Below the pieces are notes generated by a model. That model was given only the letters and a program-made list of their open reading frames with translations. It ran no database searches and had not been told where the DNA came from. This document shows, piece after piece, positions 8,092 through 61,015 of a DNA stretch of 64,000 nt. The stretch comes from Ylistrum balloti (taxonomy: Eukaryota): the NCBI RefSeq assembly GCF_031769215.1, contig NW_026782129.1:806001-870000 (forward strand). Direction: 5' to 3'. Both the position numbers and the translations under genes were made by a program. Numbering within the stretch: the stretch's first letter is position 1; every line of letters starts with the position of its first letter.

Positions 8092-8133
8092 CATCACACA
8101 ACTGTTTCGTCCCTCTAGAACTCATCAATGATG
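8092..8133 (-). ncRNA. Minimal type I hammerhead ribozyme motif H1 (decayed)
   Basis: Minus strand CATCA-TTGATGA-GTTC-TAGAG-GGAC-GAAA-CAGTTG-TG-TGATG. Stems I and II pair; C3 is U and the cleavage nucleotide is G. Confidence 0.8.
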
Positions 8134-9189
8134 CTTATGGTCTAAATTATGAAGCCTTAAAGATATGACTTACAATAATCCCAAAATGATAAAAAAATGT
8201 CAATATCTAGATTGGGATTAATAGATTTATATTATGGAATTAATATTTTTCCTCTTGTTTTAACGAAACCACGACGATAATGATTGGATGATTATTCTAA
8301 GCACCCTCGATCATTTTGTATCAAGAAATATAACGTGACAACTAATATTAAAAAAAAAGCATCCGAACTGAAGGTTAAACTATACATGCAATCACTTGTA
8401 AGATGTCATTTGACGCAATGTCACGTGGCTAGATGCGGGAGATATCATGGTACTAGAACGAACGTGCCATACAATATGTATAGGGGCACGATTCTCATCA
8501 TTACATGAAGGATAGGCCACAAATCTTGACGAATCAAAACATATTCGGTATAAACCAGTTTCGTCTGGACCTTGGTAAATGCAAAGCGGGTTGTAGGCAC
8601 AACCTATATTTAGGGTTAAACCCCGTGACTTTGAAAGTCATTAAAACTACATGGATGTATTTGTTCAAATAAGAGCTGTGATTGGAAAACATTTGCGTTG
8701 GCTGTAAAATTTTATTCGAGCAGTATGTCTATATAAGTAATGCTTGTCAAGACTGCAAATGCTACTGTTTTATTCACGTGTTTGTACAAACGCGAATATA
8801 GAAAAGACTATCGTTTTGATAAATATACACACAAGTACATGACATGGAACTATTTAAACATCGTATTAGGGGTTTTGGCTGAAAGCAAATATTTCAGTCA
8901 ATATGTGTTGTCCTCTAATTTGTAAAAAAAAAAACCACTTAATAAAATAAAATCCAAATTTCTATTTTCAGTGTGCCTTAAGACCCAATATGTATCTGTA
9001 TATCATATCTCACACTGGCATGTATTTTATGCTACAGCGCAGTTGATGTGCGCTTCAAAACCAGAAACTTATTGAACTTTATCTACACCTTTCATGCAAT
9101 CACACTTGATAACATATTTCAGAACGTCTAAGAAAAGCAAGGTGTTTCTTTTGAAAACGCTTAAGCGTGATAGACCACTTCTCAGGAAC

Positions 9190-18589: not shown

Positions 18590-20213
18590 AAACAAACAAA
18601 ATTAAGCCCAAACTAAAATACAGATTGTCTTTAACATATGGCCAATGTTTTAGATAAATGTCATTTATCATATACGCATGTACATATACTAAATTTACTT
18701 ACATTTACTAAATAAATAGACATAAATTGCATGGACATTGTAAGTGACACGAGTAACAATACAGAAATTGTTAATATTTATCATAGAAGTTGGTTATAGG
18801 CAATGATAAATACTGCTTAATTTTCCATATTTGAAAAGAGATGATTTAAAACCATGTAGGGAAAATACAAGAATGTACAGAACATTCTGATTTTCTGTTT
18901 TTAGAACAGCTGTACGTATCGACGATCCTTGCCTGTGCCTTCCTCAACGGTTGTGTACCGTTACTTTACGAACAAATATGTAACGCTGCTTTTCCAATCC
19001 CAGAGGGTATCATTGTTGGAATATCTGCCATTGTGACAACGTTGGCTGGCATTCTGTATACATTACCGTTGTCTCTCTTCGTGTTTGAAGGTAATTTAAT
19101 ATACAATTGCATCCATGTATCAATATATCATGGCACACATTACATTTTAACATAGTTTTACGCACTGAACACGAGAGGATTACATCCCTTGTAAATTTAT
19201 TGAGTTGTAAATGACACTTTAAATAATAAGAATCACAAACTATCATACAGCTGTTCCGTCCTTCCAGGACGCGTCAGTGATGTTAAGGGCCCAAAAACTG
19301 AAACCTACGAAGCGATAATTTCAGTAGAATATGTATATGCTGAACTGTGTTTCTATTGTAATGAACTAAAACATTGGATGCAGGTTTCGTCACACCCACT
19401 AACTGCAATCTCGAAGATTTGATACACAAACAAATGAATTACACTTTTCAATACCAGTTTAGAGTTCGAAATGAAGTAAATTTCATTATATAGATGTTTT
19501 GTCCTTCAAGGACTCGTCAGTAAAATAATCTGTTAATATGTTAATACAACAAATCAGTGAGAGCGGGCAAGCTTTCACACTTACAAATGTATCCGTATTG
19601 CGCTGTAATTGAACATACTATCCACAGATTGATCTTTGATGTGCTTCCAATAGCTTGTTCTATTAAAATGAAAGCAGATTTTCAGTATTAGTTCAATCGC
19701 TGCGTATAATGTATTAGTTAATCTATTTTTCAAAAATTGAAACGGATTAAACTTCACAGCCGGAGGACAGTCTGTTGAGAAAATGATTTCCAATAAAATG
19801 TTAGTTACAATAAGCAGTACTTTGAAATTTAATGCATTGTTATTGAAAAAAGACTCATCCGTATTTGTTATAGTAATATATTAATTTACATTTAGATGGT
19901 AAATTGCCACTTAACTGTAAGAAAGTGATTTCGTTACTATGTATATCAGGATATATTGTTATGGGATGTTTATTAGATATTCAAATAACGTTCAACATGT
20001 ATATATATTTCAGGTAACACGTGGTTAGAATGGTCATTACTCGTGGCGTGTGTGCTTGGTTGTATTGTCATATTGGTCACTCCCCAGAGAAACGGGCGAG
20101 AAGATATGGATTTGTCTATTCGCGTGACTAAACCTGTGCCTTATGAAAGATTCGGAAAGGAGCACAAAGTCTTGTTTGTGGAGTCTGAAACGAAAGTTCC
20201 AGAGAACGCTTGA
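10542..20213 (+). CDS. SLC49A4: SLC49A4/DIRC2-like MFS transporter, copy B (complete, 12 coding exons, 500 aa)
   Basis: Exons 10542-10788, 11746-11833, 12198-12361, 12749-12815, 13190-13263, 14464-14514, 14809-14938, 16421-16529, 16917-16984, 17296-17414, 18905-19090 and 20014-20213. All introns are GT-AG, phases are compatible, total 1503 nt with no internal stop. Family motifs: RRWWVL...WNTWGPI, MFS motif A (DMKGIR), SAAWFPPKERATAT, PPSPPS before TM7, N-terminal ExxxLL. Confidence 0.93.
10895..11175 (+). mobile_element. Possible non-autonomous Helentron/HINE-like repeat fragment in intron 1 of copy B
   Basis: Starts TTTAGGTCATCCTGA...CGTCCATCGTCGTGCG...CGTAAACTTTTCA, resembling the 5' architecture of molluscan HINE/pearl-type repeats; recalled similarity only. 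Confidence 0.3.
13384..13445. repeat. 31-bp tandem duplication
   Basis: ATCGATT(G/T)TTATCAGTATGTGACTTTGTATT twice, one mismatch. Confidence 0.95.
15670..15960 (+). repeat. Unclassified dispersed repeat, copy 1
   Basis: Shares TCTCACTGG.GA.TTGTT.TGAT...TTCAGACCTCG.C.GGGCGT..AGAAACGGTACAAAGTG with 46425-46690. Confidence 0.75.
17486..18460 (+). mobile_element. Old, heavily decayed Tc1 transposon in intron 10 of copy B
   Basis: Plus-strand peptide relics in the expected order: RKTTTRE (~17855), LTRDH, WSDESRF (18033-18053), TLRNLAALIE**QRFPPNKLRRLVNSMRLRTQELYQRHGGYSRY (to 18331), the last matching the C-terminus of the 54-kb Tc1. Ends are approximate, with only weak TIR similarity. Confidence 0.75.
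18545..18588. repeat. A44 homopolymer followed by (CAAA)n
   Basis: Direct reading. Confidence 0.98.
19241..19282 (-). ncRNA. Minimal type I hammerhead ribozyme motif H2 (decayed)
   Basis: Minus strand CATCA-CTGACGC-GTCC-TGGAA-GGAC-GGAA-CAGCTG-TA-TGATA. A9 and A13 are mutated. Confidence 0.8.
19484..19525 (-). ncRNA. Minimal type I hammerhead ribozyme motif H3 (decayed), 243 nt from H2
   Basis: Minus strand TTTTA-CTGACGA-GTCC-TTGAA-GGAC-AAAA-CATCTA-TA-TAATG. CUGACGA and stem II are intact; G12 is mutated and stem III is damaged. Confidence 0.78.
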
Positions 20214-21992
20214 TACATCAATATGTGTTATATTCTGCTAGAAATGACGAAAAATAGCATTTTGTGACTGATTGTCTAGATAAATATGATAAATGTCGTC
20301 TGTATACATGTACGAAATGTAAATTGATAACCGTTTGTTTCAACATGATTAATTGTTATTTGTTTTATTTTATTTAATTGTTGGTCTTTTGCCGCCTGTA
20401 ATAAATGTTTTTTGTAACATTTGTTTTTGTTTGTTTGCTATTTACAATGGTTTACATTTAGATATACTTTAATGACGTTCGCAGATGTCTCCTGCACCAT
20501 AACAAGTATGAAACTCTTTCTTGCAAACTTGACGCATAGAAGGATGTAATATGAATTAATATATAAAGAGTATTATCATATATGGAGTAGTAAAATATAC
20601 AGAATATATATATATGTAGATATGATGATCGTGGTTAATTGGTTCCAGTATTGTCAAATGTAGAAAAAAAACAAGTGAAAATCTCAACAAAGAAAGATAT
20701 TTGTGTGTACAAAAGACATCACTGGAATCATTGACGTCTATACATTTATAGCGAACACAGCGAGCGCTTTATGGTATTGTGTGTGATAATTCAAAACCAC
20801 CAGGCTTAAGCTACCCATACTATTAACTTTAAACAATGTATTTTAACAGGCAAAATATCTTCAAGCTTTCATGTGGGAATGAAAACTTACTAAAAATCTT
20901 AAATGATTAAAATACATTTAACTAACGTATATGTTAATGGTTTGAAACTCACATGACCAAAATTTCGTTAAAAAATTACAATTTATACCATTCAAGATAA
21001 GTACGTTTGTTCTCCGGTATACCTGATTTCCGATATAAGCTTCGGGAAATACATCGTCTCTTATACGGATGCAGCCGAAAGGTCCGGATTTGACGTGAAA
21101 TATGTCCCGTGTCCTTATTGCATCAAAATTACAACATTTTGATGTACTTACAATAAGTGTTTGAATGTGAGGCACAATAATCGGAAAACCATATATATAT
21201 GTTTTATCTTCTTCGTTTTCAGAAAATGGCAGTTCATGTAATATTAGTAACTTTCTCTTTGCAATTTATTTGAAAATACAATATTTATACTGATTTACAA
21301 TTTATTTTTACTGAATGACAGTTTATAGTAGAATTATCTCAATATTACTATATCTCAGATCGTGAACCAAGGTTAGTCAACATTGCGTAAAAACTGGAAG
21401 TTCTAAGGTACTTTATGATTTGTTAAACAGAAAGGGATTTCTCAATAGTAAAGAGAAAAGAAAACGGTGGGGAGAACACTCGATTTTAATAATAAAAACT
21501 GGTTTAACATATAAGCACTGCCTTTACAAATCTGGCTAAAACTATATTTGTATTCAAACCTGTTTTAACTACTATCTCATTTCTTTTTAAAGCAAAACTA
21601 AAGATAATCCACTCTGTAACTCTTAAAGGGAAAAATTGTACATTTATTTTGAAGTTTTTATTTATTTTTAGAGTCTAGATGTATTTTAGAAGGCTTCATT
21701 CATACATTTTTTTCTTTAAAGAAACATCTGCCTTTGGTAGTAACATTGAAAACAAAAACCAAGATTCCAATATGTCGCTTTCTTTGTTCATTTATTTAAC
21801 AGGTTTAGCGTCCGCTTTTACGGCCTTTCGGCATTTCAGCTTTTCAGCAGAAGAGACAATGTTGTCAGTCCGGTTATTCTTCTTATAAAACAGTGTCTAT
21901 ACACAACTTACACAAGTTACTAAATATCAATTCATTAAAAACTAGACATGTCGACCACATTAGTGAAAGACACAACACTGCTACAGGCGATA

Positions 21993-21995
<3 letters not shown>

Positions 21996-22042
<47 letters not shown>
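21996..22042. repeat. (AT)n microsatellite
   Basis: Direct reading. Confidence 0.98.
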
Positions 22043-22045
<3 letters not shown>

Positions 22046-22387
22046 TCTATCTGCCTACAATCATCTAATTGAATCTCCTTCCTGTAGTAGCAATACAATT
22101 CACTACACTAAGGGCCTTTAAGGCACATATCCCTTATGTCCTTGAGGCCCTTACCCACTAAACACCGCAAGGTTTTACCTTTTTTTATTCCTCCATTTTG
22201 TTTTATTTGTACCTCAACATAAATAACGTCTTTCCACTCTCTTAGAAGAAAAAATGCCAACAGAATTTGGACAAATCAATAAAGTATAATGAATCCAATA
22301 ACATAATGAATAGATATTATATATAAGCGGCAAAATATAGAATAAAATACAGCATGATTTATATATTTGTAAATTCATTACGTTAGT

Positions 22388-25491: not shown

Positions 25492-25533
25492 TATAACACA
25501 ATTGTTTCGTCCTTTTGAGACTCAACAGTAATA
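25492..25533 (-). ncRNA. Minimal type I hammerhead ribozyme motif H4 (decayed)
   Basis: Minus strand TATTA-CTGTTGA-GTCT-CAAAA-GGAC-GAAA-CAATTG-TG-TTATA. Stem III is still a palindrome (CAATTG); A6 is mutated and the cleavage nucleotide is G. Confidence 0.78.
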
Positions 25534-27493: not shown

Positions 27494-30400
27494 ATGAACG
27501 AGGAGAACCAGTTACTTGAGTCGCCCAGTCGGATCTATCGTGCACGCTGGTGGATGCTTTTGTTGTCGTCTCTTCATTTCCTTCACCAGAATGTCGGCCT
27601 TAACACCTGGGGACCAATAGCACAGTCAGTCAAAAGAGCATTTGACTGGGAAGATACCACTGTAGTTTTTATTCTCAATATGGGTCGAGTGGGAAGCATC
27701 CTTTACATGTGCGTTGGATCATACGTGTTGGACAAAGCGGGTATGCATGATTACCATATGTGTCGTTAAAATAAGAACCAAAGTAAGATATTCCAGAAAT
27801 ACATCGAAGAAGGTTTAACTGATAAAGGATTTATTCTACGAAACTGATTGAACAAAACATTCTAAAATAGCATAACTGGTGTCTTCACTTAGATGGTATA
27901 AAAGACAAACATTGTGTTAAACTGCATCATACAGCTATTTCACCCTTCTAGGTCTCGTTAGTAATATTAAAGACCTACATTTAGAAGCCTTGAAGACGAC
28001 AGAAGAAAACTCAGGGTGATCGAAAGGAAAGAAAAGAAAAGCCTCTAGGTTAAGCTTTTGAAAGAGAGGGAATGTATTCTATCAATAATGGACTATTATG
28101 TTCTCAACGAATCTCCGTTAGTTAAAGCACAATTGCCCATGCAAGTTCGTTGGAAAGTATCAAGCGAAACAAATGAGCGCGTGGATTTTAAGTGGTTGGC
28201 ACTTTGATGTACTTTAATGTATCGTTTTTGTGATGATCATTTGAATCCACATTAAAGCAGAGATTAGATACATCAAGAAAAGGATAACTGCTATTGTTAA
28301 AACATATTTTATCATTGAAATAAGAAACATTCACTTGAAATAGGAATCATTTTCGAAAAGGCATCATCTCGGTTGATAATGCTAATTTTAGTAAACTTTA
28401 TTTTCCCCGAAATTAAAATTTTGTTTCAGGTTTACGAGTAGCAATGCTTATCTATTCTGTTACTATGCTATTAAGTAACGGTTTACGATCACTAAGTACA
28501 GACAAAGACGTAGCGGTGATGTAAGTATATATATCATATTGTTTATTTAGGAGAGAAAGTGTTATTGATTTCCGTTCAGAAATCATGTTTCAGTTGTTTT
28601 GTTCTTGCTAACATTTTGTAATTCTAACTTGAGATTGATTCACTCCATCATTGTCCAATCCAGTTCTCAATCATCTTGTTTAGCAATTATGGATACTAAT
28701 ATGGTATTTTTTTCATTTAAAGACTTATTACGATCGGAGAATTTCTAAACGGGTGTAATGGCGTAATAACATTTGCAGCGCCACCAATTATAGCAGACAG
28801 GTGGTTTCCACCAGGTGAGAGAATTACCGCATCAGCCATCATGGTGCTAGCTGCATATCTTGGTGAAGGGCTGTCCAGTATAATTGGTAAGTAAAAGAAC
28901 TTACATAATAAAATCGACAGTCTTGCAAATCTCATCTTAAAAGGGTTTTTTTAAGTAGCCCGCAAGGATACACACATTTACATACCTGAATCGTTTACGT
29001 TTGCTTGTGTGATTGCTAAAGTACATCTCCCTCACGGAGTGAGCCAGATGGTGTAAGTAAACAAAGAATGCTGTAAAACTACTTAGATCATGTATACTGA
29101 TGAGTTTTGTATCATGTTAATTAAAAACAGGTAGAATATAACAATAAGTCTACCCTCCACGTCGAAATCCGTCTTAAAACGTTAATTTACATATTATCTC
29201 GATTTGCTTTACCCTGTTGATAAGTCAAACGTATTGAGTGATCGTCACTGCCTGACAAACTCATAACGCGAGGGTTCAAAAGATGCAAGTTGATGAAAAT
29301 AATTGGGAAGTTTTATGATTGCCATAGTGATCTCGTTGAGAAATATTCAATTTCTTTGTGTGAAATGAAACTGGACGTATGTGATGCTCGTTATTTTGCA
29401 TATTGGTTCCGTTGTTTTATATCCTGTTCTCATCTGAAAGCGTGAGATTACTTAATTGGTTGACCAAGGTTTACATGTCGTCGTTGAAGCAGAAGACGCT
29501 TACTCATCCGGAACACATGGTCTGATTTTCATTGTCTCTTTTCAGGAATATCTCCTTTCATTTGTTTATATTTTGCCCTCATTTTATGGAATTTTAGTTT
29601 GAATTATTATTATGTTGCCATGTTGGTATTAGGTATGTTTCTTCTAATATCAATTGATTGATTAGAAACAAACATCCTCATGAATTGTTAATGCAATATT
29701 ATACAGAAACTGCAGAACTACGGACCTTTCAACATGTACAAACCGAACAGTCACGAACAACTTCAAGTCATGCAAACGATGCAAGCTTGAATACGGAGTT
29801 TCAAATATCTGTTTTAGTATCCGTTCAATGGCCTCTGGTTATGTATAGTTGGTGTTGAACAATCATGATGGAGACGGATATCGTGTTTAGTCTGAACATT
29901 GAATAGATGGACGTAAATAATGCTATTACGAAGGTTCGTCTGTTTTCTGTCATGGAAAGATCTTTATCGTTAAAAGCGCATTAAATTTGTCCTTGAAATG
30001 TACCTATAACTCCACCTTTTAACATGAAAATGATGAACAGGTATTAAGTAAAGTAAAGCGTCGATTGTTTAGATTCGAACATGCGAACACTTTTTTATGA
30101 AACACAATTCGTTGAAACAATGTGAAATGTACGACTAAAAACACGGTTTACACAGTGACCATTCAAAATATCAAAGCATGAGAAAACAGGGGGCCCCGGA
30201 AAGATAATCGTCCTCGTGCTTCATGGAGGTCACCCGCCATTTTAGTGAACACAAAAAGGTCATTTAAAAGAGAACTACGTTTACAATAACAAAGCCACCA
30301 GGCATTTCTGTAATGTTCCGATAATATCATCGCAAATTTCAATATCATATAAATAATATTTACATGAATTATCTAATGTAAATATACAAGCAAGAAATAA

Positions 30401-34900: not shown

Positions 34901-37406
34901 ACTTGGGTTCGTTATAGCAAGGTAAGTCTTCAAAAATGTAATCTAGTTCTTTGTGTGACAATCGATTTTTGTCTTTGTGTTATCTTTTGATGTTTTTTAC
35001 GAGCTCTTTTTCCTTAAATGTAGCTATTCATTGATAAATACCATTCCTTGTATGTTATGAAAGTTGTTCAGAAAACTCCATTCGTTCATCTTTTCCGTTT
35101 GGTAATTGAAGGTTTTGTTAAATTTATTTTTAACTGCTCAGACAATGATGTACTAACCACAACTACTTTAAAACATCTATTTTAATTGTTATAGCCAGTA
35201 AATACCTATCGATTCAAAACTTATCATTGTCACATTTTATAAACAAATTTATCACTATTTAATCTCCAAATCGAAAGTGATCAATATTTGAATTATTTCA
35301 TTATTACAGGTACCAACTAAGTGATTCTTCCGTTTTATTACATGGTTTAGGCATGTACCTATGAAGCAACATTTAGTGATTATTTCGTTTTGTTGTAGGT
35401 TTTCTGATATATTTATGAAGCGACTGAAGTCAGTTCTTTTAGCTATGTTTGTACTCACCATAGCAACATCCCTATGGACGGCTTTAATTGCTAATGGATT
35501 ACTTCCTTACTCTAAATGTAAGATTTTTTATGCATTTCTAACAGTTAGTTCAGCGATTGTCAAAGTTTCATTGTGCATATGGCAAAGCTGTCTTCTATAA
35601 TAACATATGAATAACCATGTTAAGTCATTTTGTCGGCAAGTTTAGTCATAAGTTAATAAAAAGGGAGACGACTTTATTTACATCGATCGGATTAAGGTAA
35701 ATGCTGAAGTACATCCGCTGAAGTAACAGTCATTACATTCCATGAGCAATGCTATCTAGTATTCACCTTATATATCTGTGCGATTGTGTCCCGTGTATGA
35801 GAGCTCTCTACTGAATCACTATAGTAATAACATGTTTATTTATAAGACGTCAGATGAAGAAATGAATACCTAGTACAAGTAGAAGTAACTAAGTATTGAA
35901 AAATGAAAGTCTCAGATATTACGTAGGAAGATTGTACAAAAGGCACAGAAGCACATTTATAAGAATTAGATAAAGAATATTCAAATAAAGAATTAAACTG
36001 GATCTACAGAGCTGTCTACGATTTGTGTTCTGGAAGATTTTCGTTAAAGTTAATAATGGAATGATCAAACATGACAATTATACGTCCTTGAGTATATATA
36101 GACAAGATTTCCTTATCGAGATGGACTTTTCTTGTGTTTCCAGGCTCCTTTATCGATCTGGGTGTATTTCTGTTCCCTATGTATAAGTGAAAATTAGAAA
36201 AAATCAAGGAAGCCCAAAACACGTTATATGATTATACGAAAAAGCATTAGGAAAAAAAAGGTTCAGCGCACGACTATTTTTGTAAAATTCTTTGAATGAT
36301 TCTATAATATGTCAGTAACTAAGATAAAGATTTATGAAAATGTTTCATGTGGCCAATTCGAATTTACGAATTCTTATTAAACAGAAAAGTAAGTTTATCA
36401 TATATACAGCATAAAAAGTCTTCAGTTTAAATACTAGGAGGGATTTATAAGATTTAAAACTGAAATGAACACCTTTTCACAAAAGAATACAAGAATACAA
36501 ATGTATTAATTTTTCTAAAATACTGTACGTGGTAATTTGGTGATCGAAGATCCTCAAGTAACTTAATTCTTAAGTCTTAATTTTTTTTCCTCTTTGTTAA
36601 GTATGATGTTTAAAAATTCCGTATATTCAGTAAAAGTAGATATTAAATCATTGCCTATTTGTGATTCCAGGGCAGTTGTATGTATCTGCCATCGTGAGTG
36701 GTGCTATGATAAATGCCTCCTTCCCTCTGTGGTACGAGCTTATTTGTGAAATGTCCTTCCCTATACCTGGTGGAATCATTAACGGAATGTCTAACTTTTT
36801 CTTCCTCGTCTTCGCCAATGTTTTTTTCGCTCTCATGTATATTCCTGTATCCGGTAAGTATTTCATACAAATTTACTTCGGAAGTCGTAACATGTATGTA
36901 TCAAAGTAAATGTAAGTAGTAGAATACAGTTTGCAATTAAGTTATATCACACGATGAAATTATAAGAGTAGCTTTAAAGAGGAGGTTTATTCTTTCGGAA
37001 TACCATGCCAGAGGTCACCATACATCTAATGGGATGGGGATTTGAATTTTCTTTTGTTGTTGTTGTTGTTTATATATAATGTTGAAATCTATTTTTGTCA
37101 AACAGTTTTATTTATAAAAGTAAGCGATGATGTTTATAATGACATAAAGAAAAATGAACTTTGAAAACATTGTTTGATTTTTATTTTCTGAGTTGTCTCC
37201 CTTTCGCAGATCACCGATGGTTGACGTGGACTATGTTCGTTTGTTCCTTGCTTGGTTTTGTGACGTTGTTGTTATTACCGGTGACGTACGTTAGGACAGA
37301 TATCGATATGGAGGCTAAGGAAGTGGATGGCAGTCATAGTAACAAGGCCGACAATATCATGATGGAAACCTGTTCTCAGGAAAACGTTAAGAACGAAAAT
37401 GAATAA
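27494..37406 (+). CDS. SLC49A4: SLC49A4/DIRC2-like MFS transporter, copy C (complete, 12 coding exons, 479 aa)
   Basis: Exons 27494-27740, 28430-28520, 28723-28886, 30740-30779, 31013-31053, 31305-31355, 33867-33996, 34397-34505, 34854-34921, 35399-35517, 36671-36853 and 37210-37406. All GT-AG, total 1440 nt in frame. Motifs: RARWW...NTWGPIAQS, LDKAGLR, DRWFPPGERITAS, YPNKPSSAPS, PLWYELICEMSFPIPGG. Confidence 0.93.
27925..27966 (-). ncRNA. Minimal type I hammerhead ribozyme motif H5 (decayed), intron 1 of copy C
   Basis: Minus strand TATTA-CTAACGA-GACC-TAGAA-GGGT-GAAA-TAGCTG-TA-TGATG. Confidence 0.72.
29235..29625 (+). mobile_element. Penelope-like element, 3' fragment
   Basis: DKLITRGFKRCKLMKIIGKFYDCHSDLVEKYSISLCEM, then the shared 3' end containing GCTTACTCATCCGGAACAC. 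Confidence 0.8.
31947..32012. repeat. Compound (CA)n/(CGCA)n microsatellite
   Basis: Direct reading. Confidence 0.98.
33170..33420 (-). mobile_element. Penelope-like element, 3' non-coding end only
   Basis: Reverse complement of the shared end (TTGACCAAGG...GCGGGTGT...GCTTAC); clearly similar to 200-350 and 51290-51430. Confidence 0.75.
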
Positions 37407-46690: not shown

Positions 46691-47295
46691 ACATTCTGTA
46701 TTCTGTATATGGCGAATGTATTATATTGTAAAGTAACCTCCCGAATTGTAATGATGCTTATCATCTGTGTGTCGTTTGTACAACCGTTGAGATAGCAGGT
46801 AGTAGACACTGCTGGTAAACTATGAGTCCCGGAGTTTACTTTATCTGAATGGTGACACGTTTCAGAATATACATATGCACTTGACTTTTTTTCTTAAATC
46901 ATCAAATATAGAAATGTTACGAAATTTACTGAATTATTTGTCTAGTGCACTTTCCTAGCTCTGGCATTTATTCGGTCACTTTAGATTTTACCATGCGCCG
47001 CCCAGTAGGTTCTTAGAATCATTGGCGAGTCCTAGAATAACGAAACGGATATATAATGCAGTTTAAGTCATTGCTTGGATTTGCTGCATCTTATCCAATC
47101 TTGTTTTATTAAATGTTGCGATAATTTTGTGGATACTTCTGTACAATCTTTGAAGTATTGGAGAAGTAAAACCAATCCAAACAACCATTAAGTACAAGAG
47201 CTCTCAACATGGGATGTTTTTGTTCTATATCGTACAATTATCATTAATATATTTTGACATTTTGGATTTTCCTCAATCGTCATCAGGAGTTTTAG

Positions 47296-47337
47296 CATCA
47301 GTGAGGATTCCTAGAAGGATGGGACCTACAATATAGA
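47296..47337 (+). ncRNA. Hammerhead-motif relic H6 (strongly decayed; the only + strand copy)
   Basis: CATCA-GTGAGGA-TTCC-TAGAA-GGAT-GGGA with the same spacing; the upstream flank resembles the H1 flank (AATCC..AAAATG). Confidence 0.5.
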
Positions 47338-47818
47338 GAAAGCTCGCGCGACGTTTATACTAGGACGCATTCGGACGTTAACCGAAGTGTCTTTGTCATA
47401 AGTTCCGAAATCATCATCAATATATCATCATATAAGGAACTGAGCTTGTGTATGAACCATTTTGAAGTTTGAATGAGCAATACTGCTTGTGACTGAGAAT
47501 GTTTGATAATAGTATCAAAAATCGTTATTTACCCAGCTTGGCTTCACAAATAAGTGTTGGAACTCAGCTTACTGTGAATGTATACGCCAGTACGTTTAAA
47601 GCGACACTAGAGTTCTGGTTAAAACAGGCAAACAACGAAAAGTTTCAAGACAAATTTGATATAAACATACGACACTGGCATCCTGCAATGTATCCACAAG
47701 AGATATAAGTTGGTGTTTTTTCAGTACATCAAATTGTCAAGAGGAAAGATCAGAATAATATTATTGCTTGGGACAAGTCGTATGTTGCTTTGATAAATTC
47801 TTGTAAAAAACTTGTCAA

Positions 47819-49694: not shown

Positions 49695-49724
49695 CATCAC
49701 ACAGCTGTTTCGTCTTCAGTGTAA
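49695..49724 (-). ncRNA. Hammerhead-motif relic H7 with most of stem II deleted
   Basis: Minus strand TTACA-CTGA-[deletion]-AGAC-GAAA-CAGCTG-TG-TGATG, about 120 nt upstream of the copy D start codon. Confidence 0.62.
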
Positions 49725-49842
49725 AGCAAATTCAGCGTTGAGAGAAAATGGAATTATTTAACACTTCACTATGGCACTAGGGATAACTTTCAGTCAAAAC
49801 TTTAACTTTTCGTCCAGCGACTTCAGATGAACATAATTGGAT

Positions 49843-52800: not shown

Positions 52801-55800
52801 TCGCTCTGAGTATTTGCACTGTATATATCTTACTGGATAAGTAAGAAACATCACAGAGTAAAATATTCTGAGTGCAGAAACACACAATAAATAACCAATC
52901 GGATGCGAATCTGCGGCGTTCTAGCACTAAATATTCGTGAATCGTTGGCGCAATATTCACTTCAGTTTTCGGAATGGCAAAGAAATCACTGGGAATCATA
53001 TACCCATCAGATTTGATAGACATAAGGTCATACCATCCTTGTAGAAACGAGTGTGCATGTACACATATATTTTGAGTGGTCGGGTGGCATAGTGGTAACG
53101 CACTCGCCTTTCACCTAGCCGTCCGGGGTTCGATTCCCGCAATGGATGTGAAAAGATATGGGCCACCTACCCCACCACGTGGGTTTTTCCCGGGTACTCC
53201 GGTTTCCTCCCACCCTAAGACCCCTCGCGCGCTTCCATCCGAGCAAACAAGAGTGATTTATATAAGTTGGAAAAACTTGCTTCGCACCTGTTGTAAAACA
53301 AATAAAGTTTATGATTTTTAATGTTTTTAAGTATTGGTTCAATAACCACCATGTAGGTATGATTGTTGTTGAACACAAACTGTCAAGAACCGTTTGTGTT
53401 GAGACAGAAACAAATAGCCGATTGGCTTGCTAACAAACGAATACCGGTACCCAAAGGTATAAAATGCAAGTGACCTGTAAAACTGGTAATCATTTCAACG
53501 TTGACCGTGCTAACTTAATTAGAGTTCTGGATCTTTTTCAGGGCCAAAGGTAGTGGAGAAACCAATTTTCACCCACGATAGGTAAAGTCAATTATTTTGT
53601 ATTATGTTCAACAAATTTTGAAGAATTTAATATATTTTTCTGATCTCATGCTTTATCAACATTAGTTAAACTTTCATCAATTTATTTTTAGAAATGAAAT
53701 AAAATTTAGATGACTTTCAGTTATTATCCTTCTAAATTAAATAATAATTTATGTATGTTATGTTTCAGTATTCTGCATAACTCAACCGTAACTGCAAACT
53801 CGACGAGAGGTTTGTTTCCTTGTTTTCTTTTATTTAAAATGTGTAAATCTTTTAAACATCGTACAGACCGTTAATTAAATATAAATCAATCACAGGTGAC
53901 ATTGCTCGTTAGAGACAATGTTTTAAGTGTTATTGGTGACATTGCTCGTTAGAGACAATGTTTTAAGTGTTATTGATGCACCTTCTTTAGTGCATCTTAA
54001 ATCAAACACAACATAAGTTACATATTTCTTTCTATACAACATATGACTATTTTGTTATCAATAGATATACTAAACAAAAAAAGAAAGGTAACACTAATTT
54101 ATTCTGTGATTAATTAATGAACCCCTTCATAAATCCTTACCAATCATGTATGAATAAAGTAATTGATCAATATGATAAAACTGCAGTCATGGTTCATCAT
54201 AAAACTTTGCGTTCAGTTGATTTTATTCGACTGTAAAGGACGTTGGGGTCAATTTCAAAGTAACACCATTAGTAACGGGTATGGCCACCGTTTGCGAAGT
54301 AAACAGCATTGCAGCGTCGTCGCATGGAACTCGTAAACCGGCGGATAATTCGATGATAGATGTTGTCCCATTCAGCGATCAAGGCTTGGGCCAGCTCCTG
54401 CAAGTTTGACGGCTGATTTTGACGTTCTCTCACGCGTCGCCCAAGAACGTCCCAGACATGCTCAATCGGTGACAAATCAGGTGATTTAGATGGCCAATCT
54501 AACACCTGTACGTTATTCTGCTGCAAGAAAGTTCTGCTGACGCGACTGGTGTGCGCTGGTGCGTTATCCTGTGGAAAAATGGCACCAACGCCATGGCGTC
54601 TTAAGAATGGCAGAACCACTGGTCTTATAATTTCGTCCCGATATCGAATGCTGGTTAAATTGCCATTTAACACAACAAGCCTGGTACGAGTCCCCCCACA
54701 AATACCACCCCAAACCATTACACTTCCGCCGCCAAAGCGGTCCCGTTCTGTGACGCAGCAGTTCGCAAAACGCTCCCCTCGTCGCCTCCACACTCTGCGC
54801 ATTCCGTCACCGTGTTGCAGACAAAACATGGACTCATCTGAAAACAGAAAATTTTTCCATTGTCGTAAGGCCCAACGACGGTGAACACGGGTTCAGTTAC
54901 GCCGATTATTACGGTGGGTCCAGTGTAGGGACGCCGCGCTTTCAATTGGTAGGCCCTCAACCTGTTGCGGACTGTTTGGAGAGACACACGACGCCCAAAC
55001 AATGTCCTCGTAGTCTCTACTGCGGTTACGAATCGATTGCGCAAGTGTATCAATCGTATACGACGGTCATCCCTGGCGGTCGTTTTACCCAGTTTGGTTT
55101 AAACGACTAACCAACTGTCAAATTGTCTTAACACTGCAACCAAAATGCCGTGCAACTCGACGGCGAGACTCCCCAGCCTGAATCATGCCTACAGCCTTTT
55201 CTCTCTGTACTTGTGACAGCCGGGTCATAATGATAAAGTTGATAGATAGCAAGATTCGGTGATTTCTAAGTCCTAACGATCTAAGGAACAGTTGTCAGTT
55301 TGAATATTTATGAAATTCTTTCTTTTTTTGTTGAGTATATGTGTGTATATACATTCTCTGTCCATCTCTGTGTTAGTTATCAATGGCGAGGAAATGTTGG
55401 ATGAAGTGATGACCTATCTCTATGTTCGTAAGTACACGTTGATTTCGTTTTAACCTAAATACTTTGACAAAAGATTATAAACATTAGTAGAATAATCATA
55501 AAACTAAATGAAAGCTATTGATACTCAGATCTAAAATACTAAATATAGAACTCATGAAGCCAAGAAAAGTATCTAACTGGCCTAAGTATAGACGCAGAAC
55601 ACTGGAGGCAACTAAATATATCTGCATGGCAATCGACGCTTATAAAGTCTCCCTTGTAAATAATTGCCTTTAACGTAAATCATAATCCGAAAGCCTAAAA
55701 CTATATGAAGAAAAAATGCTTACCACCAAAAGAGTAAACGTCACATAATTTTGAATTATTTACATTGATAACCTGCCATTTCTGTTTCAATTTTGCATTT

Positions 55801-58800
55801 AAACATATTTGACAAGAACCCCGACTTCTTTCGAATAAAAATCAGCATAACATCCAACATACTTGATTTTATATGCTGAGTGACGAACAGCTGAACACAT
55901 ACATATACACACACATATCTACATTTATGGACGACAATATTTTTATTCCTATATAATGTAGTGTTGTACATAAATAATGATACCAGTCAATAATGTGTTT
56001 TAGAACAAGCTGAGAGAAATTTATCTATACGATTCAATGGGTGTTGATAGGGTTTAGAATATATAAGAGAATGTTTGTCGTCCGAAAAAACATGTTTTAA
56101 TCAATGTAACGCCAACACTCGCTGTAAGTTAGCTCATTAAAACTACACTTATATGAAAGTACCGACCCCATCACCCCGCCCAAAATAATGATAAAAAAAT
56201 GAATAACCTGGTAAAGAATATTAATCTTTGTTACAAAAATGAAAAATGGCTTTCTTACGATGAAATATTTCTTTCTACCTTTGAAATCACATAAAATAGC
56301 CATGGTAATGATGACTGGTCGGCTTTAAATGCTATCTTTTGTTTCAGTTCACAAATATAGATATCTCCCATTAACTTAAATTGAGGGTTTACACAGATAA
56401 GAGTATTTTTGACAAATCCTTCAATACCTTCAAGAAACAGATTTTTTATTATGCATAAGTCACACAGTTATGTTTGTCTTTCGTATGAAGGCAACTGTGT
56501 TGTCATTAAAACTTAAAGTTTTCTAATTGTTTATACTATCAGAACATCTATGCAATATAAGTTACCATCCCGAGACGGACTGGTATACATGTAATGTGTG
56601 CTGTGTTGTCAGTGTATCATTCTGTATAGTATTCGACAGATATGGTATTAGTGTTATTAGTGGGCATTACTGTGTGGCACAATAAAATATGTATTACTTC
56701 ATAATGTGTGGAGTGTCAAAACTATTATATGGTCCAACAGTGTTCAGAGTGTTCTGAATGTAATATACTGTGCATTACCTCGTAGTGTGAAGTACTATAT
56801 AATACATGTATGCATTACTTCCTCAGAGTGTGGAGTGTCGGCAGTGTTGTTCATTATGACTGTAGCTTACTTCCCTGATAAACCGTCATCGGCTCCAAGT
56901 ACCTCTTCTGGTATGTCACGTCTTAACTACCTGGAATCCTTCCGGAAACTCGTCAGGTAGCTATTCATTAAATGACTTTTGAACTTTTCCAAAACTGACA
57001 TATTGTTCTGAATATTACTTTTTTTATTTTTGTGTTGATTTTTAACAAAGTCGTTTGGATTTATATATATTGCATGATTGTTTGTGTTATAGATCCGGAT
57101 GTATTTAAGAAGTTATTGCAATTGCATTTCTATGATATATTTCGCGTATTGAAACAAAACACGCGCAAGAAGACCGTGCTAACATATAGTGTGTAAAGTC
57201 TTACTAAATATATAGCAAACCCATTTCGGTCAAAATTGATGATTACAAAACTTTGATCACAATCAAATTCTACTGTACGTTTTGACATGAATATTTCCGT
57301 TGTTGAGACAATATTTTTGTTAATACTGAAACATACATTGTAGAAACAAGCATCTGCTATTAGTAGTGGTGGTTTTGGGTGTAATAATGGGCATCTACAC
57401 GTCCTTTATTCAAGTGACAGACATAATATACGATCCTTTGGGCGTTTCACAGGTAATTGCATTGGCTTTGTACATGCTTATACACTAAAAACCGATAATG
57501 CACATATTATCTACACATTATTCGACACTAGTTATAACCCCTTTAAAGAACAGTTTGTTAATTTAAAAACCAATTAATCTAAATTACATATTTTCGAACT
57601 GTGGCAGAGTTTTGTACGATGTCCAGAGTAAAATAAGACCGTTGTTATATTCAGTCCGATATTGGATAACGAAATCTCGTATATCTCTTTTCATCAACGA
57701 CATCCACTACTTCCATCAAAATGTGTTTGCTCTAAACAAATTGTATAATGCAGTATATTAGATCCAGTTTCCTCGACAGGTTGAAGTTAGAACCTGAGCA
57801 ATATAACCGATTTGATTTTTATGTGATGATCGGAAATCTAAATTTTCTCCAAAACCAACTTTTTGGACAGATCTCAAATCAAACCGGTTCCGAGACCGAA
57901 GTCTAGGTTATACGCACACGAAACACATCACAATTCTGAAAACACAAATTTGGGAGGACTTCGGTATCCCTACGATTTTATATTTGTACGTAATAACGGT
58001 TTCGTGGAAGTGACACAACCGGACGGATAAAAGATTTAAGTCACAAACACCAACAACTGTTTTCGGTTTGTTCTGTTCGTTTCCTAATGTGATAAATGTT
58101 TTCTTGTTACAGAACTTACAAAATGTTTCTATCAATGTGGCAAATATCAAGGAAAATGCATTGAAAAGATAAGATATAGAGATATCAATCAAAGAAAAAG
58201 TTTTTCAACACTATATTGCGTATACTAAAACTAAGATTTCTGTAAGTAATTTTTTTTTTATCTATATCGGCATTTTATACATCTGCTCTCTGTTCCAGTT
58301 GAGCGCTGGGTGGATAGCATTTTATACCATAATCACAGGCAGTGTACTTGGGTTCTTCATAGCAAGGCAAGTTTTTCTTTTCTGTGCGAGAGTGCCAGTT
58401 CCAAGTTAATTACATCGGTGTGTGTTTTTTTCGATGTTTAGATCATTGATCCGCTTACTGCTATACCAGGCTTTGTATATCATCTTTGCCATTGTATTAT
58501 TTCTTAATGTTAAACTACGGATGGAGTACCGATAAATGAAGCTACTATGTTGAACAAAGAACAAAACATTCCTTGCCTTGTATGAAAACTTTTCACCGAG
58601 CTCCGATTTGTTCAAAATCTCCTTATGTAATTAAACTAGTTTCGTTAGAAGTACAACCACTACATTAAATCATCTTTAATTTGAATGTTATATCCAGTGA
58701 ATACTTATCAACACATTTCATAAACATCGGCTACTATATAGCCTCCAATATCGAGGATCGATATTTGTTTCATCAATGCAGTTACCATCTATCACAATCA

Positions 58801-61015
58801 ACTGATACAATGCGTTATTTCATACTTGTCTGATCGTTACGTTGTATTGTGGGGGTTTAAAACGTGCATTAATGAAGCGACATTTAGTAATTATTCCGTT
58901 TTGTTGTAGGTTTTCTGATAAATTTATGAAGCGACTCAAGTCAGTTCTTTTAGCTATGTTTGTACTCATCATAGCAACATCTCTGTGGACGGCTTTACTT
59001 GCTAATGGATTGCTTCCTTACTCTAAATGTAAGATTTTTATGCATATTGTCAATGTCATTGTCCCACTTACACTGTACATGTGGCAAAGCTGTCTTATGT
59101 GAATAAGATGCGAATAACTCTTATTTTGTAGTTCAACATCAAGGCACTTTATTTCTTGTCATCAATTTTATATACCTATATTCATTAAATAGACCCGTTA
59201 TGATTTTATTCATATCAAGGGATATAGGTAAATGCTTTAATAAAATTTACCAGCACAACAGTCTGTAAGACATTTTATCAATTGAATGTTTGCTGTCGGT
59301 ATGAACTATGGGTTTGATCTTGAAAGGTCATATTCTAGAAACTAATTTAAAAGCAAAGCAAGAACATGCTCCTGAATGGGGTTAATAGGAAACAGTCTTG
59401 TTTTATTATTATTTCGGGGCAACATATCTTTTCAGTATTTTTCTTCTTTGATTGATGGTCATTTGAAAATTCTAAAATTAAGTTTGATTTTTAAGAACCT
59501 TCCTGGCAATTAAAAAAGTTGAAAAATTCTAGTTAATCCTTTTAAATGTTTTTCATGCAAAACTTGAGATAACAACGAATCGAAAAGCTTCCTTTATCAC
59601 GTTAGGGACTAACTAGCGATAACTACCGATATTGATCTTACAAAGATAGAGTAGAATTAAACATAGAACTGAAATGAACACATTTTGATCCGACTTTTAT
59701 ACGTCCTGAAACATTAACTCCAGTTCCAGTATGTTTAAGTCTTAATAAATGTAACTTGGCTACCTGTTTGATATAGGAGAGCGAAACAATGATTATGCAT
59801 ATTTGTCACCATCACCATCTAAATAAGGGAAACCTCTACAACCAATCACGATTCTGCCATTGGTTTGTACAGTTTTGTTCAAAACATAGTTAATGTACTT
59901 TCTACTAATATTCCACGTTTACATTCGGATCCATATGTGTAAGGTAGATATAATCAGTCTAAATACAAAATCACGAAAGAGTAAAACAGATATCGAAACA
60001 AATGTATAACTTTTTGTCCGATCTTGTGTATAATCATGTATGCTTATCTCACTTGATGTCATATCTTCAATGTTCGCAGATATATCCTTGCTTCCAATTT
60101 AAACAATAACGTTATCTGAAAAACAGCAAATGGCATACAATGTATCAAATATTGCATATTTATGATTCTAGGGCAGTTGTATGTATCTGCCATCGTGAGT
60201 GGTGCTGTGATGAATGCCTCCTTCCCTCTGTGGTATGAGGTTATTTGTGAAATGTCCTTCCCTATACCCGGTGGAATCATTAACGGAATGGCTAACTTCG
60301 TCGTCGTCGTCTTTGCCAATATTTTTTTTGGTCTCATGTATATGCCTGTATCTGGTAAGTCTTTTACGAATATTAATTTCGGAAATGAAAAAAATATCTG
60401 TTCCATTTAAGTAAATTTAGAAGTACATGCATTAAACTGTATCATACAGCGGTTTCGTTCTTTGATGACTTGCCAGTGATGATAAAAGTCTAAATTTTAA
60501 AATAATCAAATCTCTAAATGGAATAAGGTCGAAGGGCAGCTTTGAATAAAACGCTTACCTTTCTTGGTACTTTTTCATAAGTCTCCATTGCCATCTTTCC
60601 TTTATTCATATTTTGCCTTCATTTCATCTTATGGAATTTAAATTACATTGACATATTTGTATTTTCGTTAAGGGAAACTAGATTGTTATTTATCAAAGTA
60701 ATTTTCTCAGGGTTATTCTTCTGTGAAAGTAATAATAAATCCATACGTCTGCAAACAAAAATGGCGTCAAACTAAATCAACATCAAATACATTTTTTATT
60801 ACCTGAGTTGTTTCTCTTCTGCAGACTACAGATGGTTGACGTGGACTATGTTTGCTTCGTCCTTGCTTGGTTTTATGACGTTGTTGTTATTACCGTTGAC
60901 CTACATTCGGACAGATATTGATAAAGAGGCTAAGGATGAGGATGACAGTCGTAGCAACGAGGCCGACAATATCATGATGGAAACCTGTACTCAAGAAAAT
61001 GTAGGGAAGGATTAA
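49843..61015 (+). CDS. SLC49A4: SLC49A4/DIRC2-like MFS transporter, copy D (complete, 12 coding exons, 481 aa)
   Basis: Exons 49843-50101, 50663-50753, 50939-51102, 53542-53581, 53769-53809, 55377-55427, 56827-56956, 57344-57452, 58299-58366, 58910-59028, 60172-60354 and 60825-61015. Total 1446 nt in frame. Internal exon sizes are identical to copy C. The intron 9 donor is GC (AAG/GCAAGT). Confidence 0.92.
51200..52470 (-). mobile_element. Penelope-like element with the RT core deleted, in intron 3 of copy D
   Basis: Minus-strand relics FMKVEFV..VDAMNISNILHQKSVQTSIPQYF, CSCATSTCNYGPTGQIVTGDLSI, CIQKELG...GNPTY and LYWIPKLQKNPY, joined directly to GDDSF...AYTTYEINMSQMIRY and the shared 3' end. 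Confidence 0.82.
53078..53320 (+). mobile_element. tRNA-derived V-SINE (RUDI/BivaV-like) in intron 3 of copy D
   Basis: A box TGGCATAGTGG (53085-53095), B box GGTTCGATTCC (53127-53137), V domain GTGGGTTTTTCCCGGGTACTCCGGTTTCCTCCCAC (~53179-53213), AATAAAGTTT tail. Confidence 0.88.
53895..53974. repeat. Perfect 40-bp tandem duplication
   Basis: GGTGACATTGCTCGTTAGAGACAATGTTTTAAGTGTTATT twice, no mismatch. Confidence 0.97.
54070..55335 (-). mobile_element. Tc1 (DD34E) DNA transposon, near full length, defective transposase, in intron 5 of copy D
   Basis: TA at 54068-69 and 55336-37. 18-bp TIRs CTAAACAAAAAAAGAAAG / CTTTCTTTTTTTGTTGAG with one mismatch. Transposase remnants 55228-54269: MTRLSQVQRE..., ARRPY, FSDES, GGGSVMVWGGI, QDNAPAH, SPDLSPIEHVW, GGHTRY. 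There are 34 residues between the second D and E. Stops and frameshifts in the 5' half. Confidence 0.95.
60440..60481 (-). ncRNA. Minimal type I hammerhead ribozyme motif H8 (decayed), intron 11 of copy D
   Basis: Minus strand CATCA-CTGGCAA-GTCA-TCAAA-GAAC-GAAA-CCGCTG-TA-TGATA. Confidence 0.68.
60550..60655 (+). mobile_element. Short Penelope-like 3'-end fragment
   Basis: ACGCTTAC...GTACTTTTTCA..AGTCTCCAT...TTCATATTTTGCC matches the shared 3' end at 7820-7890. Confidence 0.55.

What the first reader, a model, noticed from the sequence alone, without database searches (positions are those of the whole stretch)
8092..60481. Hidden family of eight minimal type I hammerhead ribozyme motifs
Seen: seven 42-nt motifs at 8092, 19241, 19484, 25492, 27925, 47296 and 60440 share the spacing 5-7-4-5-4-4-6-2-5; an eighth at 49695 is deletion-shortened. 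Majority consensus: CATCA CTGAYGA GTCC TAGAA GGAC GAAA CAGCTG TA|TGATG. Stem I (CATCA/TGATG) and stem II (GTCC/GGAC) pair, and stem III is a palindrome (CAGCTG, with a double-substituted variant CAATTG). Flanks are also homologous, so this is a repeat family. Established: CUGANGA/GAAA/UH is the hammerhead core, and minimal type I hammerheads with a tiny palindromic stem III occur in PLEs and metazoan retrozymes, where they can cleave as dimers. Inference: the consensus is a self-cleaving RNA, but every copy here has at least one core lesion (C3, G5, A6, A9, G12, A13 or G at position 17), so these are probably fossils of a family with active copies elsewhere. I cannot tell whether this family is already described.
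Basis: partly seen in the sequence, partly recalled or inferred. Interest (0 to 1): 0.85.

Follow-up and report, generated by a model that had tools for sequence, protein, structure and literature searches.

The report
Decayed hammerhead-ribozyme repeats in scallop
The window holds about ten worn-out copies of a short mobile repeat whose ancestral sequence was a self-cutting hammerhead RNA; this kind of element is already well known in molluscs and other animals, and every copy here is dead.

Summary
Six ungapped 42-nt motifs (8092, 19241, 19484, 25492, 27925, 60440) and the deletion-shortened one at 49695 lie on the minus strand. They match one consensus far beyond chance. A covariance model built from unrelated intact hammerheads also finds all seven.

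The motif at 47296 (+) is at chance level on sequence alone. A partial copy lies near 35930-36050 (-).

The majority consensus is an intact animal type I hammerhead. It has a 4-bp helix II and a 2-bp helix III with the palindromic loop AGCU. All nine copies carry core lesions, and their pairing is no better kept than in shuffles, so they are drifting fossils.

Homology runs from about -45 to +170 around each motif. The two pairs (243 and 279 nt) align end to end. No reverse transcriptase or endonuclease remnant was found.

Best reading: dead copies of a roughly 240-280-nt non-autonomous, retrozyme-type retroelement, possibly derived from Penelope-like elements, lying in and around tandem scallop gene copies.

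This is a new member of a known kind. The scan has already noted such hammerhead families many times elsewhere in this genome. Cleavage and living copies remain untested.

The parts
8092..8133 (-). Hammerhead relic, 36/42 to the consensus. Lesions: C3->U, and G at position 17. All helices can still pair.
   Evidence: model R1 34.1 bits, E 3.7e-10
7941..8270 (-). Full extent of the repeat unit around the 8092 motif (about -134 to +190). It abuts another repeat family at 7440-7948.
19484..19525 (-). First hammerhead relic of the 243-nt pair, 34/42. Lesion: G12->A, at a CpG.
   Evidence: R1 30.5 bits
19241..19282 (-). Second hammerhead relic of the pair and the best copy, 38/42. Lesions: A9->C and A13->G. 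Family homology continues only about 25 nt beyond it.
   Evidence: R1 39.6 bits, E 3e-12
19283..19525 (-). The 243-nt unit, measured from hammerhead start to next hammerhead start. GC 0.34, no ORF. It lies antisense in the intron after the plus-strand exon at 18899-19091.
25492..25533 (-). Hammerhead relic, 30/42. Lesions: A6->U and G at position 17. Loop 3 reads CAATTG. It is the only copy that Rfam Hammerhead_1 reports (26 bits, below the cut-off of 34).
27925..27966 (-). Hammerhead relic, 35/42. Lesion: G5->A. The unit spans about 27776-28110 and ends about 33 nt from the exon at 27464-27743, antisense to it.
47017..47058 (+). Lesions: C3->U and A6->G; helices II and III are damaged. It is the first motif of the 279-nt pair.
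47296..47337 (+). Marginal second relic of the 279-nt pair, 25/42 with four core lesions. It is supported only by its position and by the collinear alignment of the whole pair with the 243-nt pair. A different repeat starts right after it.
   Evidence: (nhmmer E 5e-4); not found by R1
46753..46886 (+). Weak partial unit upstream of 47017, similar to the body of the 243-nt unit. If real, this locus holds about 2.1 units.
   Evidence: E 3.4e-4 to 4e-4; E 0.56
49695..49736 (-). Relic that lost 12-13 nt (part of the core plus the helix II 5' strand). Its 3' half is intact apart from G at position 17. Its body matches the 243-nt unit out to about +190.
   Evidence: (E 0.0035)
60440..60481 (-). Hammerhead relic, 34/42. 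Lesions: A6->G and G8->A. It lies antisense, 86 nt from the splice donor of the exon at 60143-60354.
   Evidence: E 0.054
35930..36050 (-). Partial tenth copy: the 3' part of the hammerhead (..ACAGCTcTGTAgATc) followed by the conserved downstream segment.
   Evidence: E 0.0057; sequence read

Best explanation
These are dead genomic copies of a short, non-coding, hammerhead-bearing retroelement of the animal 'non-LTR retrozyme' type, with a unit of about 240-280 nt. The family may itself derive from the terminal repeats of Penelope-like elements.

The copies lie in introns and spacers of a tandemly duplicated scallop gene cluster, mostly antisense to the genes.

Inferred life cycle of the live element, taken from the published model and not shown here:
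1. Multi-unit transcripts cut themselves at the hammerhead, after the A that follows GUA.
2. Because helix III is only 2 bp with the palindromic loop AGCU, cutting probably depends on two units pairing through ACAGCUGU.
3. A host ligase circularises the monomers.
4. A reverse transcriptase supplied in trans, with Penelope-like elements the favoured candidate, copies them into DNA of one or more units with variable end points.

Shown here: the copies, their homology, their unit length, their broken cores and their neutral decay.
For: - The motif copies are far beyond chance.
- The consensus is an intact hammerhead.
- Intact relatives with the same core, helix II and helix III pass Rfam Hammerhead_1, and their helix I covaries.
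- Homology covers about 215 nt around each motif.
- The two head-to-tail pairs, 243 and 279 nt apart, align with each other along their whole length.
- Single copies carry unit sequence on both sides of the hammerhead, as expected for copies of a tandem or circular template.
- Unit GC is 0.32-0.34 and there is no ORF.
- Pairwise identity is highest in the hammerhead (64.5%) and falls to background across the body (56, 45, 42, 36%). This suggests the source elements kept the ribozyme while the body diverged.
- Many lesions are CpG transitions.
- The dimer fold is predicted to be the stable one.
- The architecture and unit size match published invertebrate retrozymes, including mussel (PMC7229834, PMC4209133).
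Against: - No copy is intact.
- No Rfam match reaches the gathering score: the best is 26 bits against 34.
- The copies here show no covariation beyond shuffles.
- The two units fold no better than shuffles (z about -1), whereas live retrozyme RNAs are described as highly self-paired.
- Only two loci have more than one hammerhead, and there are no long tandem arrays.
- No intact same-family copy could be retrieved: the collections on hand hold no scallop DNA.
- An otherwise identical hammerhead type also occurs beside a GIY-YIG ORF in a Penelope-like metagenomic locus (L015). The ribozyme's shape therefore does not separate retrozyme from Penelope origin.
Confidence: 0.72

Rival explanations
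1. The copies are fragments of autonomous Penelope-like elements, either solo pseudo-LTRs or truncated ends, and do not form a separate non-autonomous retrozyme family.
For: - Penelope-like elements carry hammerheads in their terminal repeats and are abundant in bivalves (PMC4209133, PMC8557442).
- A 2026 preprint derives vertebrate retrozymes from these repeats (10.64898/2026.07.22.740005).
- Metagenomic locus L015 has a GIY-YIG ORF, then a hammerhead with the same helix II/III, then a 675-aa ORF.
Against: - The hammerhead pairs are 243 and 279 nt apart, not about 3 kb.
- No ORF of 110 aa or more lies next to any copy, and Pfam gave only an unrelated DDE_3 hit at 54269-54829.
- tblastn with three ORFs from hammerhead-bearing metagenomic loci (one with a GIY-YIG domain, so probably Penelope-like) found nothing below E 0.03. 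This test has limited sensitivity.
- The ribozyme has a 4-bp helix II, no extra base after A9 and a real helix III. The published Penelope min-HHRs differ on all three points (PMC4209133).
Confidence: 0.18
2. They are functional, host-conserved intronic ribozymes that act on the transcripts of the transporter-like genes.
For: Four loci lie 33-150 nt from exon boundaries. Two of them (19241 and 60440) lie in the equivalent intron of two paralogs.
Against: - All nine cores are broken.
- The copies lie antisense to the genes.
- Pairing is no better kept than in shuffles.
- The corresponding places in the other duplicate show no hammerhead.
Confidence: 0.02
3. The resemblance to a hammerhead is incidental: this is an ordinary dispersed repeat, or one copy multiplied by the local segmental duplication.
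For: The window does contain a tandem duplication of about 22-23.5 kb and older paralogs. 47296 is at chance level on sequence alone.
Against: - The consensus satisfies every core position and all three helices at once.
- A model built from unrelated hammerheads finds seven copies.
- The copies are not at corresponding positions of the duplicates.
- The hammerhead is the best-conserved part of the unit.
Confidence: 0.05

Closest known systems
Metazoan non-LTR retrozymes (Cervera and de la Pena 2020, PMC7229834), e.g. the Mytilus galloprovincialis family with about 5000 hammerheads
   Same: - A type I hammerhead in a short, AT-rich, non-coding unit.
- Head-to-tail units.
- Helix III of 2 bp capped by a tetraloop.
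- A mollusc host.
- Heterogeneous bodies around a conserved ribozyme.
   Different: - The unit here is 243-279 nt, against 350-390 bp in mussel.
- The copies are mostly single or paired, not long arrays.
- All are inactivated.
- No loop 1 or closing stem could be found.
- RNA circles and cleavage are not shown.
- No scallop family appears in the papers searched.
Minimal hammerheads of Penelope-like element terminal repeats (Cervera and de la Pena 2014, PMC4209133)
   Same: - Type I topology.
- Short helix I (5 bp).
- Palindromic 15.2-16.2/loop 3 that allows dimers.
- Massive dispersed occurrence in invertebrate genomes.
   Different: - Published min-HHRs have helix II of 6-8 bp, an extra base between A9 and 10.1, and little or no helix III. 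Here helix II is 4 bp, there is no extra base, and helix III has 2 bp plus a 4-nt loop.
- No reverse transcriptase/endonuclease ORF lies beside these copies.
Amphibian satellite 2 / axolotl retrozyme hammerheads that cleave as dimers
   Same: A weak helix III with a palindromic loop. The double-hammerhead is predicted to be the stable fold for the consensus.
   Different: Those motifs have a 1-bp helix III (HHR_Amex1) and conserved loop 1-loop 2 contacts, in 330-350-bp units. Dimer dependence is only predicted here.
Rfam RF00163 Hammerhead_1
   Same: The consensus has the family's core and helices. Intact relatives with the same helix II/III score 34.9-52.4 bits.
   Different: No copy in the window reaches the gathering score of 34 bits; the best is 26.0.

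Membership tests
Hammerhead ribozyme, type I (Rfam RF00163) | Conserved core: C3 U4 G5 A6 N7 G8 A9, G12 A13 A14, A15.1-U16.1, H17 (not G) | tested here: not met
   The majority consensus has every core base. Each of the nine individual copies has 1-6 core lesions. The family ancestor qualifies; no copy here does.
Hammerhead ribozyme, type I (Rfam RF00163) | Three helices around the core, with helix I open (type I order) | tested here: met
   The order is helix I (5 bp), helix II (4 bp, G10.1-C11.1), helix III (2 bp plus AGCU). 78.6% of pair cells still pair, against 27-46% when the partners are slid.
Hammerhead ribozyme, type I (Rfam RF00163) | Score at or above the curated gathering threshold (34 bits) | tested here: not met
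   There are no hits at the gathering threshold. The best hit is 26.0 bits, at 25491-25534. Intact metagenomic relatives with the same helix II/III pass at 34.9-52.4 bits.
Hammerhead ribozyme, type I (Rfam RF00163) | Covariation that supports the helices | tested here: inconclusive
   Within the window there is none beyond shuffles: 78.6% paired against 78.4%, and 4 double changes against 3.5. This is expected for neutral decay. In 20 metagenomic relatives, all six helix I pairs covary, with 0 of 500 shuffles reaching the score.
Hammerhead ribozyme, type I (Rfam RF00163) | Site-specific self-cleavage | not testable with these tools
   This needs in vitro transcription of an intact family member or of the consensus, as monomer and as dimer.
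Metazoan non-LTR retrozyme | A type I hammerhead inside short head-to-tail units of about 170-400 bp | tested here: met
   There are two pairs, 243 and 279 nt apart and collinear with each other. The other loci hold a single hammerhead with unit sequence on both sides. No arrays longer than about 2 units were seen.
Metazoan non-LTR retrozyme | Low GC and non-coding, with no LTR, PBS or PPT | tested here: met
   Unit GC is 0.34 and 0.32. There is no ORF of 110 aa or more at any copy. The only direct repeat in each pair is the hammerhead itself. PBS and PPT were not searched for specifically.
Metazoan non-LTR retrozyme | The unit RNA is highly self-paired | tested here: inconclusive
   Minimum free energy z-scores are -0.95 and -1.01 against shuffles. 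The copies are decayed, so this does not bear on the live element.
Metazoan non-LTR retrozyme | Expressed as linear and circular RNA of unit length | not testable with these tools
   No RNA data are on hand.
Penelope-like element pseudo-LTR (min-HHR) | Hammerheads flank a reverse transcriptase/GIY-YIG ORF, about 3 kb apart | tested here: not met
   The spacings are 243 and 279 nt. There is no adjacent ORF. Pfam gave only DDE_3, elsewhere in the window. tblastn with three ORFs from hammerhead-bearing metagenomic loci gave a best E of 0.03 (low sensitivity for decayed remnants).
Penelope-like element pseudo-LTR (min-HHR) | Min-HHR architecture: helix II of 6-8 bp, an extra base between A9 and 10.1, helix III absent or 1 bp | tested here: not met
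   The consensus has a 4-bp helix II, no extra base, and a 2-bp helix III with a 4-nt loop. The definition is taken from PMC4209133.

The most novel reading that the evidence does not exclude
This is a scallop retrozyme family that has not been described. Its live members would make RNA circles of about 240-280 nt. Their hammerhead, lacking a recognisable loop 1, would cut only as a double hammerhead through the ACAGCUGU palindrome. The family would insert preferentially antisense and close to exon boundaries of host genes: four of seven loci lie within 150 nt of an exon. That pattern would differ from the intron depletion reported for vertebrate retrozymes.
Probability: 0.3. Interest if true: 0.4.

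Novelty: new member of a known kind. Interest (0 to 1): 0.2.

Why it matters
The finding adds a scallop family to the known hammerhead-bearing retroelements of invertebrates. It also shows how densely such relics can populate gene regions: about eight loci in 64 kb.

Its practical value is for annotation. These relics should be masked as repeats and not called as ribozyme genes.

The gradient of conservation, with the ribozyme kept and the body divergent, is indirect evidence that the hammerhead mattered to the live elements.

It does not open a new question. The class, its likely life cycle and its link to Penelope-like elements are already in the literature.

Tried and rejected
- **Rfam over the whole window.** The gathering threshold gave nothing. 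The E-value mode gave one sub-threshold Hammerhead_1 hit, plus spurious microRNA hits on an (AT)n run.
- **Covariation among the window copies.** There is none beyond shuffles.
- **A consensus fold with flanks, to find loop 1 or a closing stem.** Only helix II was predicted.
- **Rod-like folding of the two units.** z is about -1.
- **Live same-family copies.** An exact-pattern scan of metagenome contigs found 24 loci, but all belong to other families, with a different helix I and loop 2. A family-specific pattern found nothing in viral or prokaryote-genome contigs.
- **Penelope coding remnants.** ORF listing, Pfam and tblastn all found none.
- **Do 27925, 49695 and 60440 predate the local duplication?** The corresponding places show 19/42 identity, 16/42 identity and a 33-nt gap. 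The introns are mostly not alignable. This stays unresolved.
- **Naming the host gene from single exons.** Pfam and PDB sequence searches gave no hit. The large protein search was not used, because its length window excludes full-length relatives of a single exon.
- **The 164-aa ORF in the 565-nt metagenomic hammerhead repeats.** Substitutions fall evenly over codon positions and there are indels, so it is probably not coding.
Full report
**What is in the sequence**

The window is AT-rich (34% GC) animal DNA with three runs of N. Earlier notes of this scan identify the genome as a scallop, and one names Ylistrum balloti. I did not verify the species.

Seven of the eight read as hammerheads on the minus strand; 47296 is on the plus strand.

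| Copy | Strand | Identity to consensus (of 42) | Note |
|---|---|---|---|
| 19241 | - | 38 | best copy |
| 8092 | - | 36 | |
| 27925 | - | 35 | |
| 19484 | - | 34 | |
| 60440 | - | 34 | |
| 25492 | - | 30 | |
| 49695 | - | 25 | 5' half lost to a 12-13-nt deletion |
| 47296 | + | 25 | at chance level on sequence alone |

Shuffled windows never exceeded 26/42. The core/helix II/helix III pattern with up to 3 mismatches hits twice, against 0 expected. A partial copy lies near 35930-36050 (-).

No motif lies within 1.8 kb of an assembly gap, and neither pair spans one. The gaps therefore do not touch the observation.

**Is it a hammerhead?**

In standard numbering this gives:
- helix I of 5 bp;
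- C3-A9;
- helix II of 4 bp with G10.1-C11.1 and a 5-nt loop;
- G12 A13 A14;
- helix III of A15.1-U16.1 and C15.2-G16.2, closed by AGCU;
- A17 as the cleavage-site base.

Rfam finds nothing at its curated threshold. In E-value mode it reports only 25491-25534, at 26 bits against a cut-off of 34.

I then scanned metagenome contigs for the intact core, helix II and helix III, and found 24 loci.
- All have a different helix I and loop 2, so they belong to other families.
- 13 of the 20 scanned pass Hammerhead_1 at 34.9-52.4 bits.
- Their helix I was not part of the search pattern. It shows compensatory changes at all six pairs, with 0 of 500 shuffles reaching the score.

A covariance model built from these 20 sequences finds seven of the window's copies with the filters off, at E from 3e-12 to 0.054. 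It finds nothing else credible. It does not find 47017 or 47296.

**State of the copies**

Every copy has core lesions:

| Copy | Core lesions |
|---|---|
| 8092 | C3, G17 |
| 19241 | A9, A13 |
| 19484 | G12 |
| 25492 | A6, G17 |
| 27925 | G5 |
| 47017 | C3, A6 |
| 47296 | C3, A13, A14, U16.1 |
| 49695 | the deletion, plus G17 |
| 60440 | A6, G8 |

Several of these are CpG transitions.

Pairing is kept in 78.6% of cells, which equals the shuffled mean of 78.4%, and there is no excess of double changes. The copies therefore inherited their pairing from the ancestor and have drifted since. The single CAATTG variant does not count as covariation.

**The repeat unit**

Sensitive pairwise and profile comparisons show homology from about 45 nt (in some pairs about 130 nt) upstream to about 170-200 nt downstream of the motif.

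Two loci hold two motifs head to tail:
- 19484 to 19241, 243 nt apart;
- 47017 to 47296, 279 nt apart.

In each pair the hammerhead is the only direct repeat. The two pairs align with each other along their whole length (nhmmer E 5e-4). That alignment is the only real support for 47296.

Weak similarity to the unit body upstream of 47017 (46753-46886) suggests about 2.1 units at that locus. After the second motif, family homology stops within about 25 nt at 19241. At 47296 another repeat begins immediately.

Single-motif loci carry unit sequence on both sides of the hammerhead. This fits copies of a tandem or circular template with variable end points.

Units are 32-34% GC and have no ORF. They fold no better than shuffles, with z about -1. 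For decayed copies that result is uninformative.

Mean pairwise identity is 64.5% in the hammerhead. It falls to 56%, 45%, 42% and 36% in successive 45-column blocks downstream, and is 35% in the 50 nt upstream. Part of this fall may come from alignment difficulty and truncation. It is also what one expects if the source elements kept the ribozyme while their bodies diverged.

**Context**

The plus strand carries paralogous exons of a membrane-protein-like gene:
- 2516-2708, 18899-19091, about 36641-36850, and 60143-60354;
- 27464-27743 and 49826-50104.

A tandem duplication offsets 27.4-37.5 kb from 49.8-61.1 kb by about 22.3-23.6 kb.

Copies 19241/19484, 27925 and 60440 lie antisense in introns, 33-150 nt from splice donors. 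Copy 49695 lies 90 nt upstream of an exon.

The corresponding places in the other duplicate show no recognisable hammerhead: 19/42 identity, 16/42 identity, or a 33-nt gap. The introns are mostly not alignable. Whether these insertions came before or after the duplication is therefore open.

The copies are not simply one element multiplied by the duplication. There are seven or eight separate loci in 64 kb. Six of seven clear loci are on the minus strand (binomial p 0.125), which is not significant.

**What it is**

The published description of the 'canonical' animal type I hammerhead is helix I of about 6 bp, helix II of 4 bp, and helix III of 1-2 bp capped by a 2-4-nt palindromic loop (PMC4209133). 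The description of invertebrate retrozymes is AT-rich, non-coding head-to-tail units of 170-400 nt, including about 5000 motifs in 350-390-bp repeats in mussel (PMC7229834). Both descriptions fit.

The Penelope 'min-HHR' definition is a long helix II, an extra base after A9, and no helix III. It does not fit.

No reverse transcriptase or GIY-YIG remnant was found.

The distinction is soft, however, for two reasons:
- A metagenomic locus (L015) has a GIY-YIG ORF followed by a hammerhead with the same helix II/III.
- A 2026 preprint derives vertebrate retrozymes from Penelope terminal repeats (10.64898/2026.07.22.740005).

I therefore read these as retrozyme-type non-autonomous copies (about 0.7), with Penelope fragments as the main rival (about 0.2).

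**How it would work (inferred)**

ViennaRNA predicts that the consensus monomer prefers a non-hammerhead fold: -10.4 kcal/mol, against -4.4 for the hammerhead fold. Two strands give the double hammerhead with an 8-bp intermolecular helix III at -26.5 kcal/mol.

This agrees with the dimer mechanism described for hammerheads with a weak palindromic helix III (PMC4209133, PMC7229834). The later steps are taken from the published model and are not shown here: cleavage of multi-unit transcripts, ligation to circles, and reverse transcription in trans.

**Novelty**

The class is well known. I found no paper in the searchable library that describes a scallop family, so this is at most a new member.

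The scan itself has already noted hammerhead repeats many times elsewhere in this genome: 259 notes mention hammerheads, and 35 mention retrozymes. These include dispersed families of about 230 bp and 360-400 bp, and 45-bp hammerhead satellites. Interest is accordingly low.

Noticed in passing
window 27400-37500 and 49800-61100; also exons at 2516-2708 and 18899-19091: There is a tandem segmental duplication (offset about 22.3-23.6 kb) of a plus-strand, multi-exon, membrane-protein-like gene, plus two older paralogous exon copies. Exon blocks are 81-90% identical between the duplicates, and the introns are mostly not alignable. The gene could not be named from single exons.
   Followed up: partly
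window 104-695, 7440-7948, 29242-29623, 33146-33443, 38498-38915, 51226-51566, 60496-60660: This is a second dispersed repeat family (up to about 600 nt, 70-80% identity). Two of its copies abut hammerhead units in the same relative orientation: downstream of the 8092 unit and upstream of the 60440 motif. It may be chance (rough estimate p about 0.2) or a shared insertion preference.
   Followed up: partly
window 19241-19282 and 60440-60481: Two hammerhead relics lie antisense in the equivalent intron of two old paralogs, 150 and 86 nt after homologous exons. The exons are only about 65-70% identical, so these look like independent insertions into the same intron. Overall, four of seven loci lie within 150 nt of an exon boundary. 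This was not tested against a full annotation.
   Followed up: no
window 54269-54829 (-): A 186-aa ORF carries a DDE_3 transposase domain (Pfam E 2e-14). It is a DNA-transposon remnant unrelated to the hammerhead family.
   Followed up: no
L018 1-1839, L014 and L006 (freshwater lake metagenome contigs): These contigs hold tandem repeats of 565-569 nt, each with an intact hammerhead that has the same helix II/III. The whole spacer is an open frame of 164 aa on the ribozyme strand. Differences between copies fall evenly over codon positions (10/7/7) and include indels, so the frame is probably not coding.
   Followed up: partly
L015 210-4071 (metagenome contig JAAUYI010063516.1): This is a Penelope-like arrangement: an ORF ending in a GIY-YIG domain, then a hammerhead with a GUCC/GGAC helix II and the ACAGCUGU helix III, then a 675-aa ORF. 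It shows that this 'canonical' ribozyme type also occurs in autonomous elements.
   Followed up: partly
window 21975-22059: An (AT)23 microsatellite produces several sub-threshold microRNA-family hits in Rfam (mir-297, mir-1277, mir-568, mir-466). These are low-complexity artefacts.
   Followed up: yes
window 24136-24475 and 47339-47637: Another repeat pair (nhmmer E 1.9e-26) starts exactly where the 47296 motif ends. It marks the 3' limit of that hammerhead locus.
   Followed up: no
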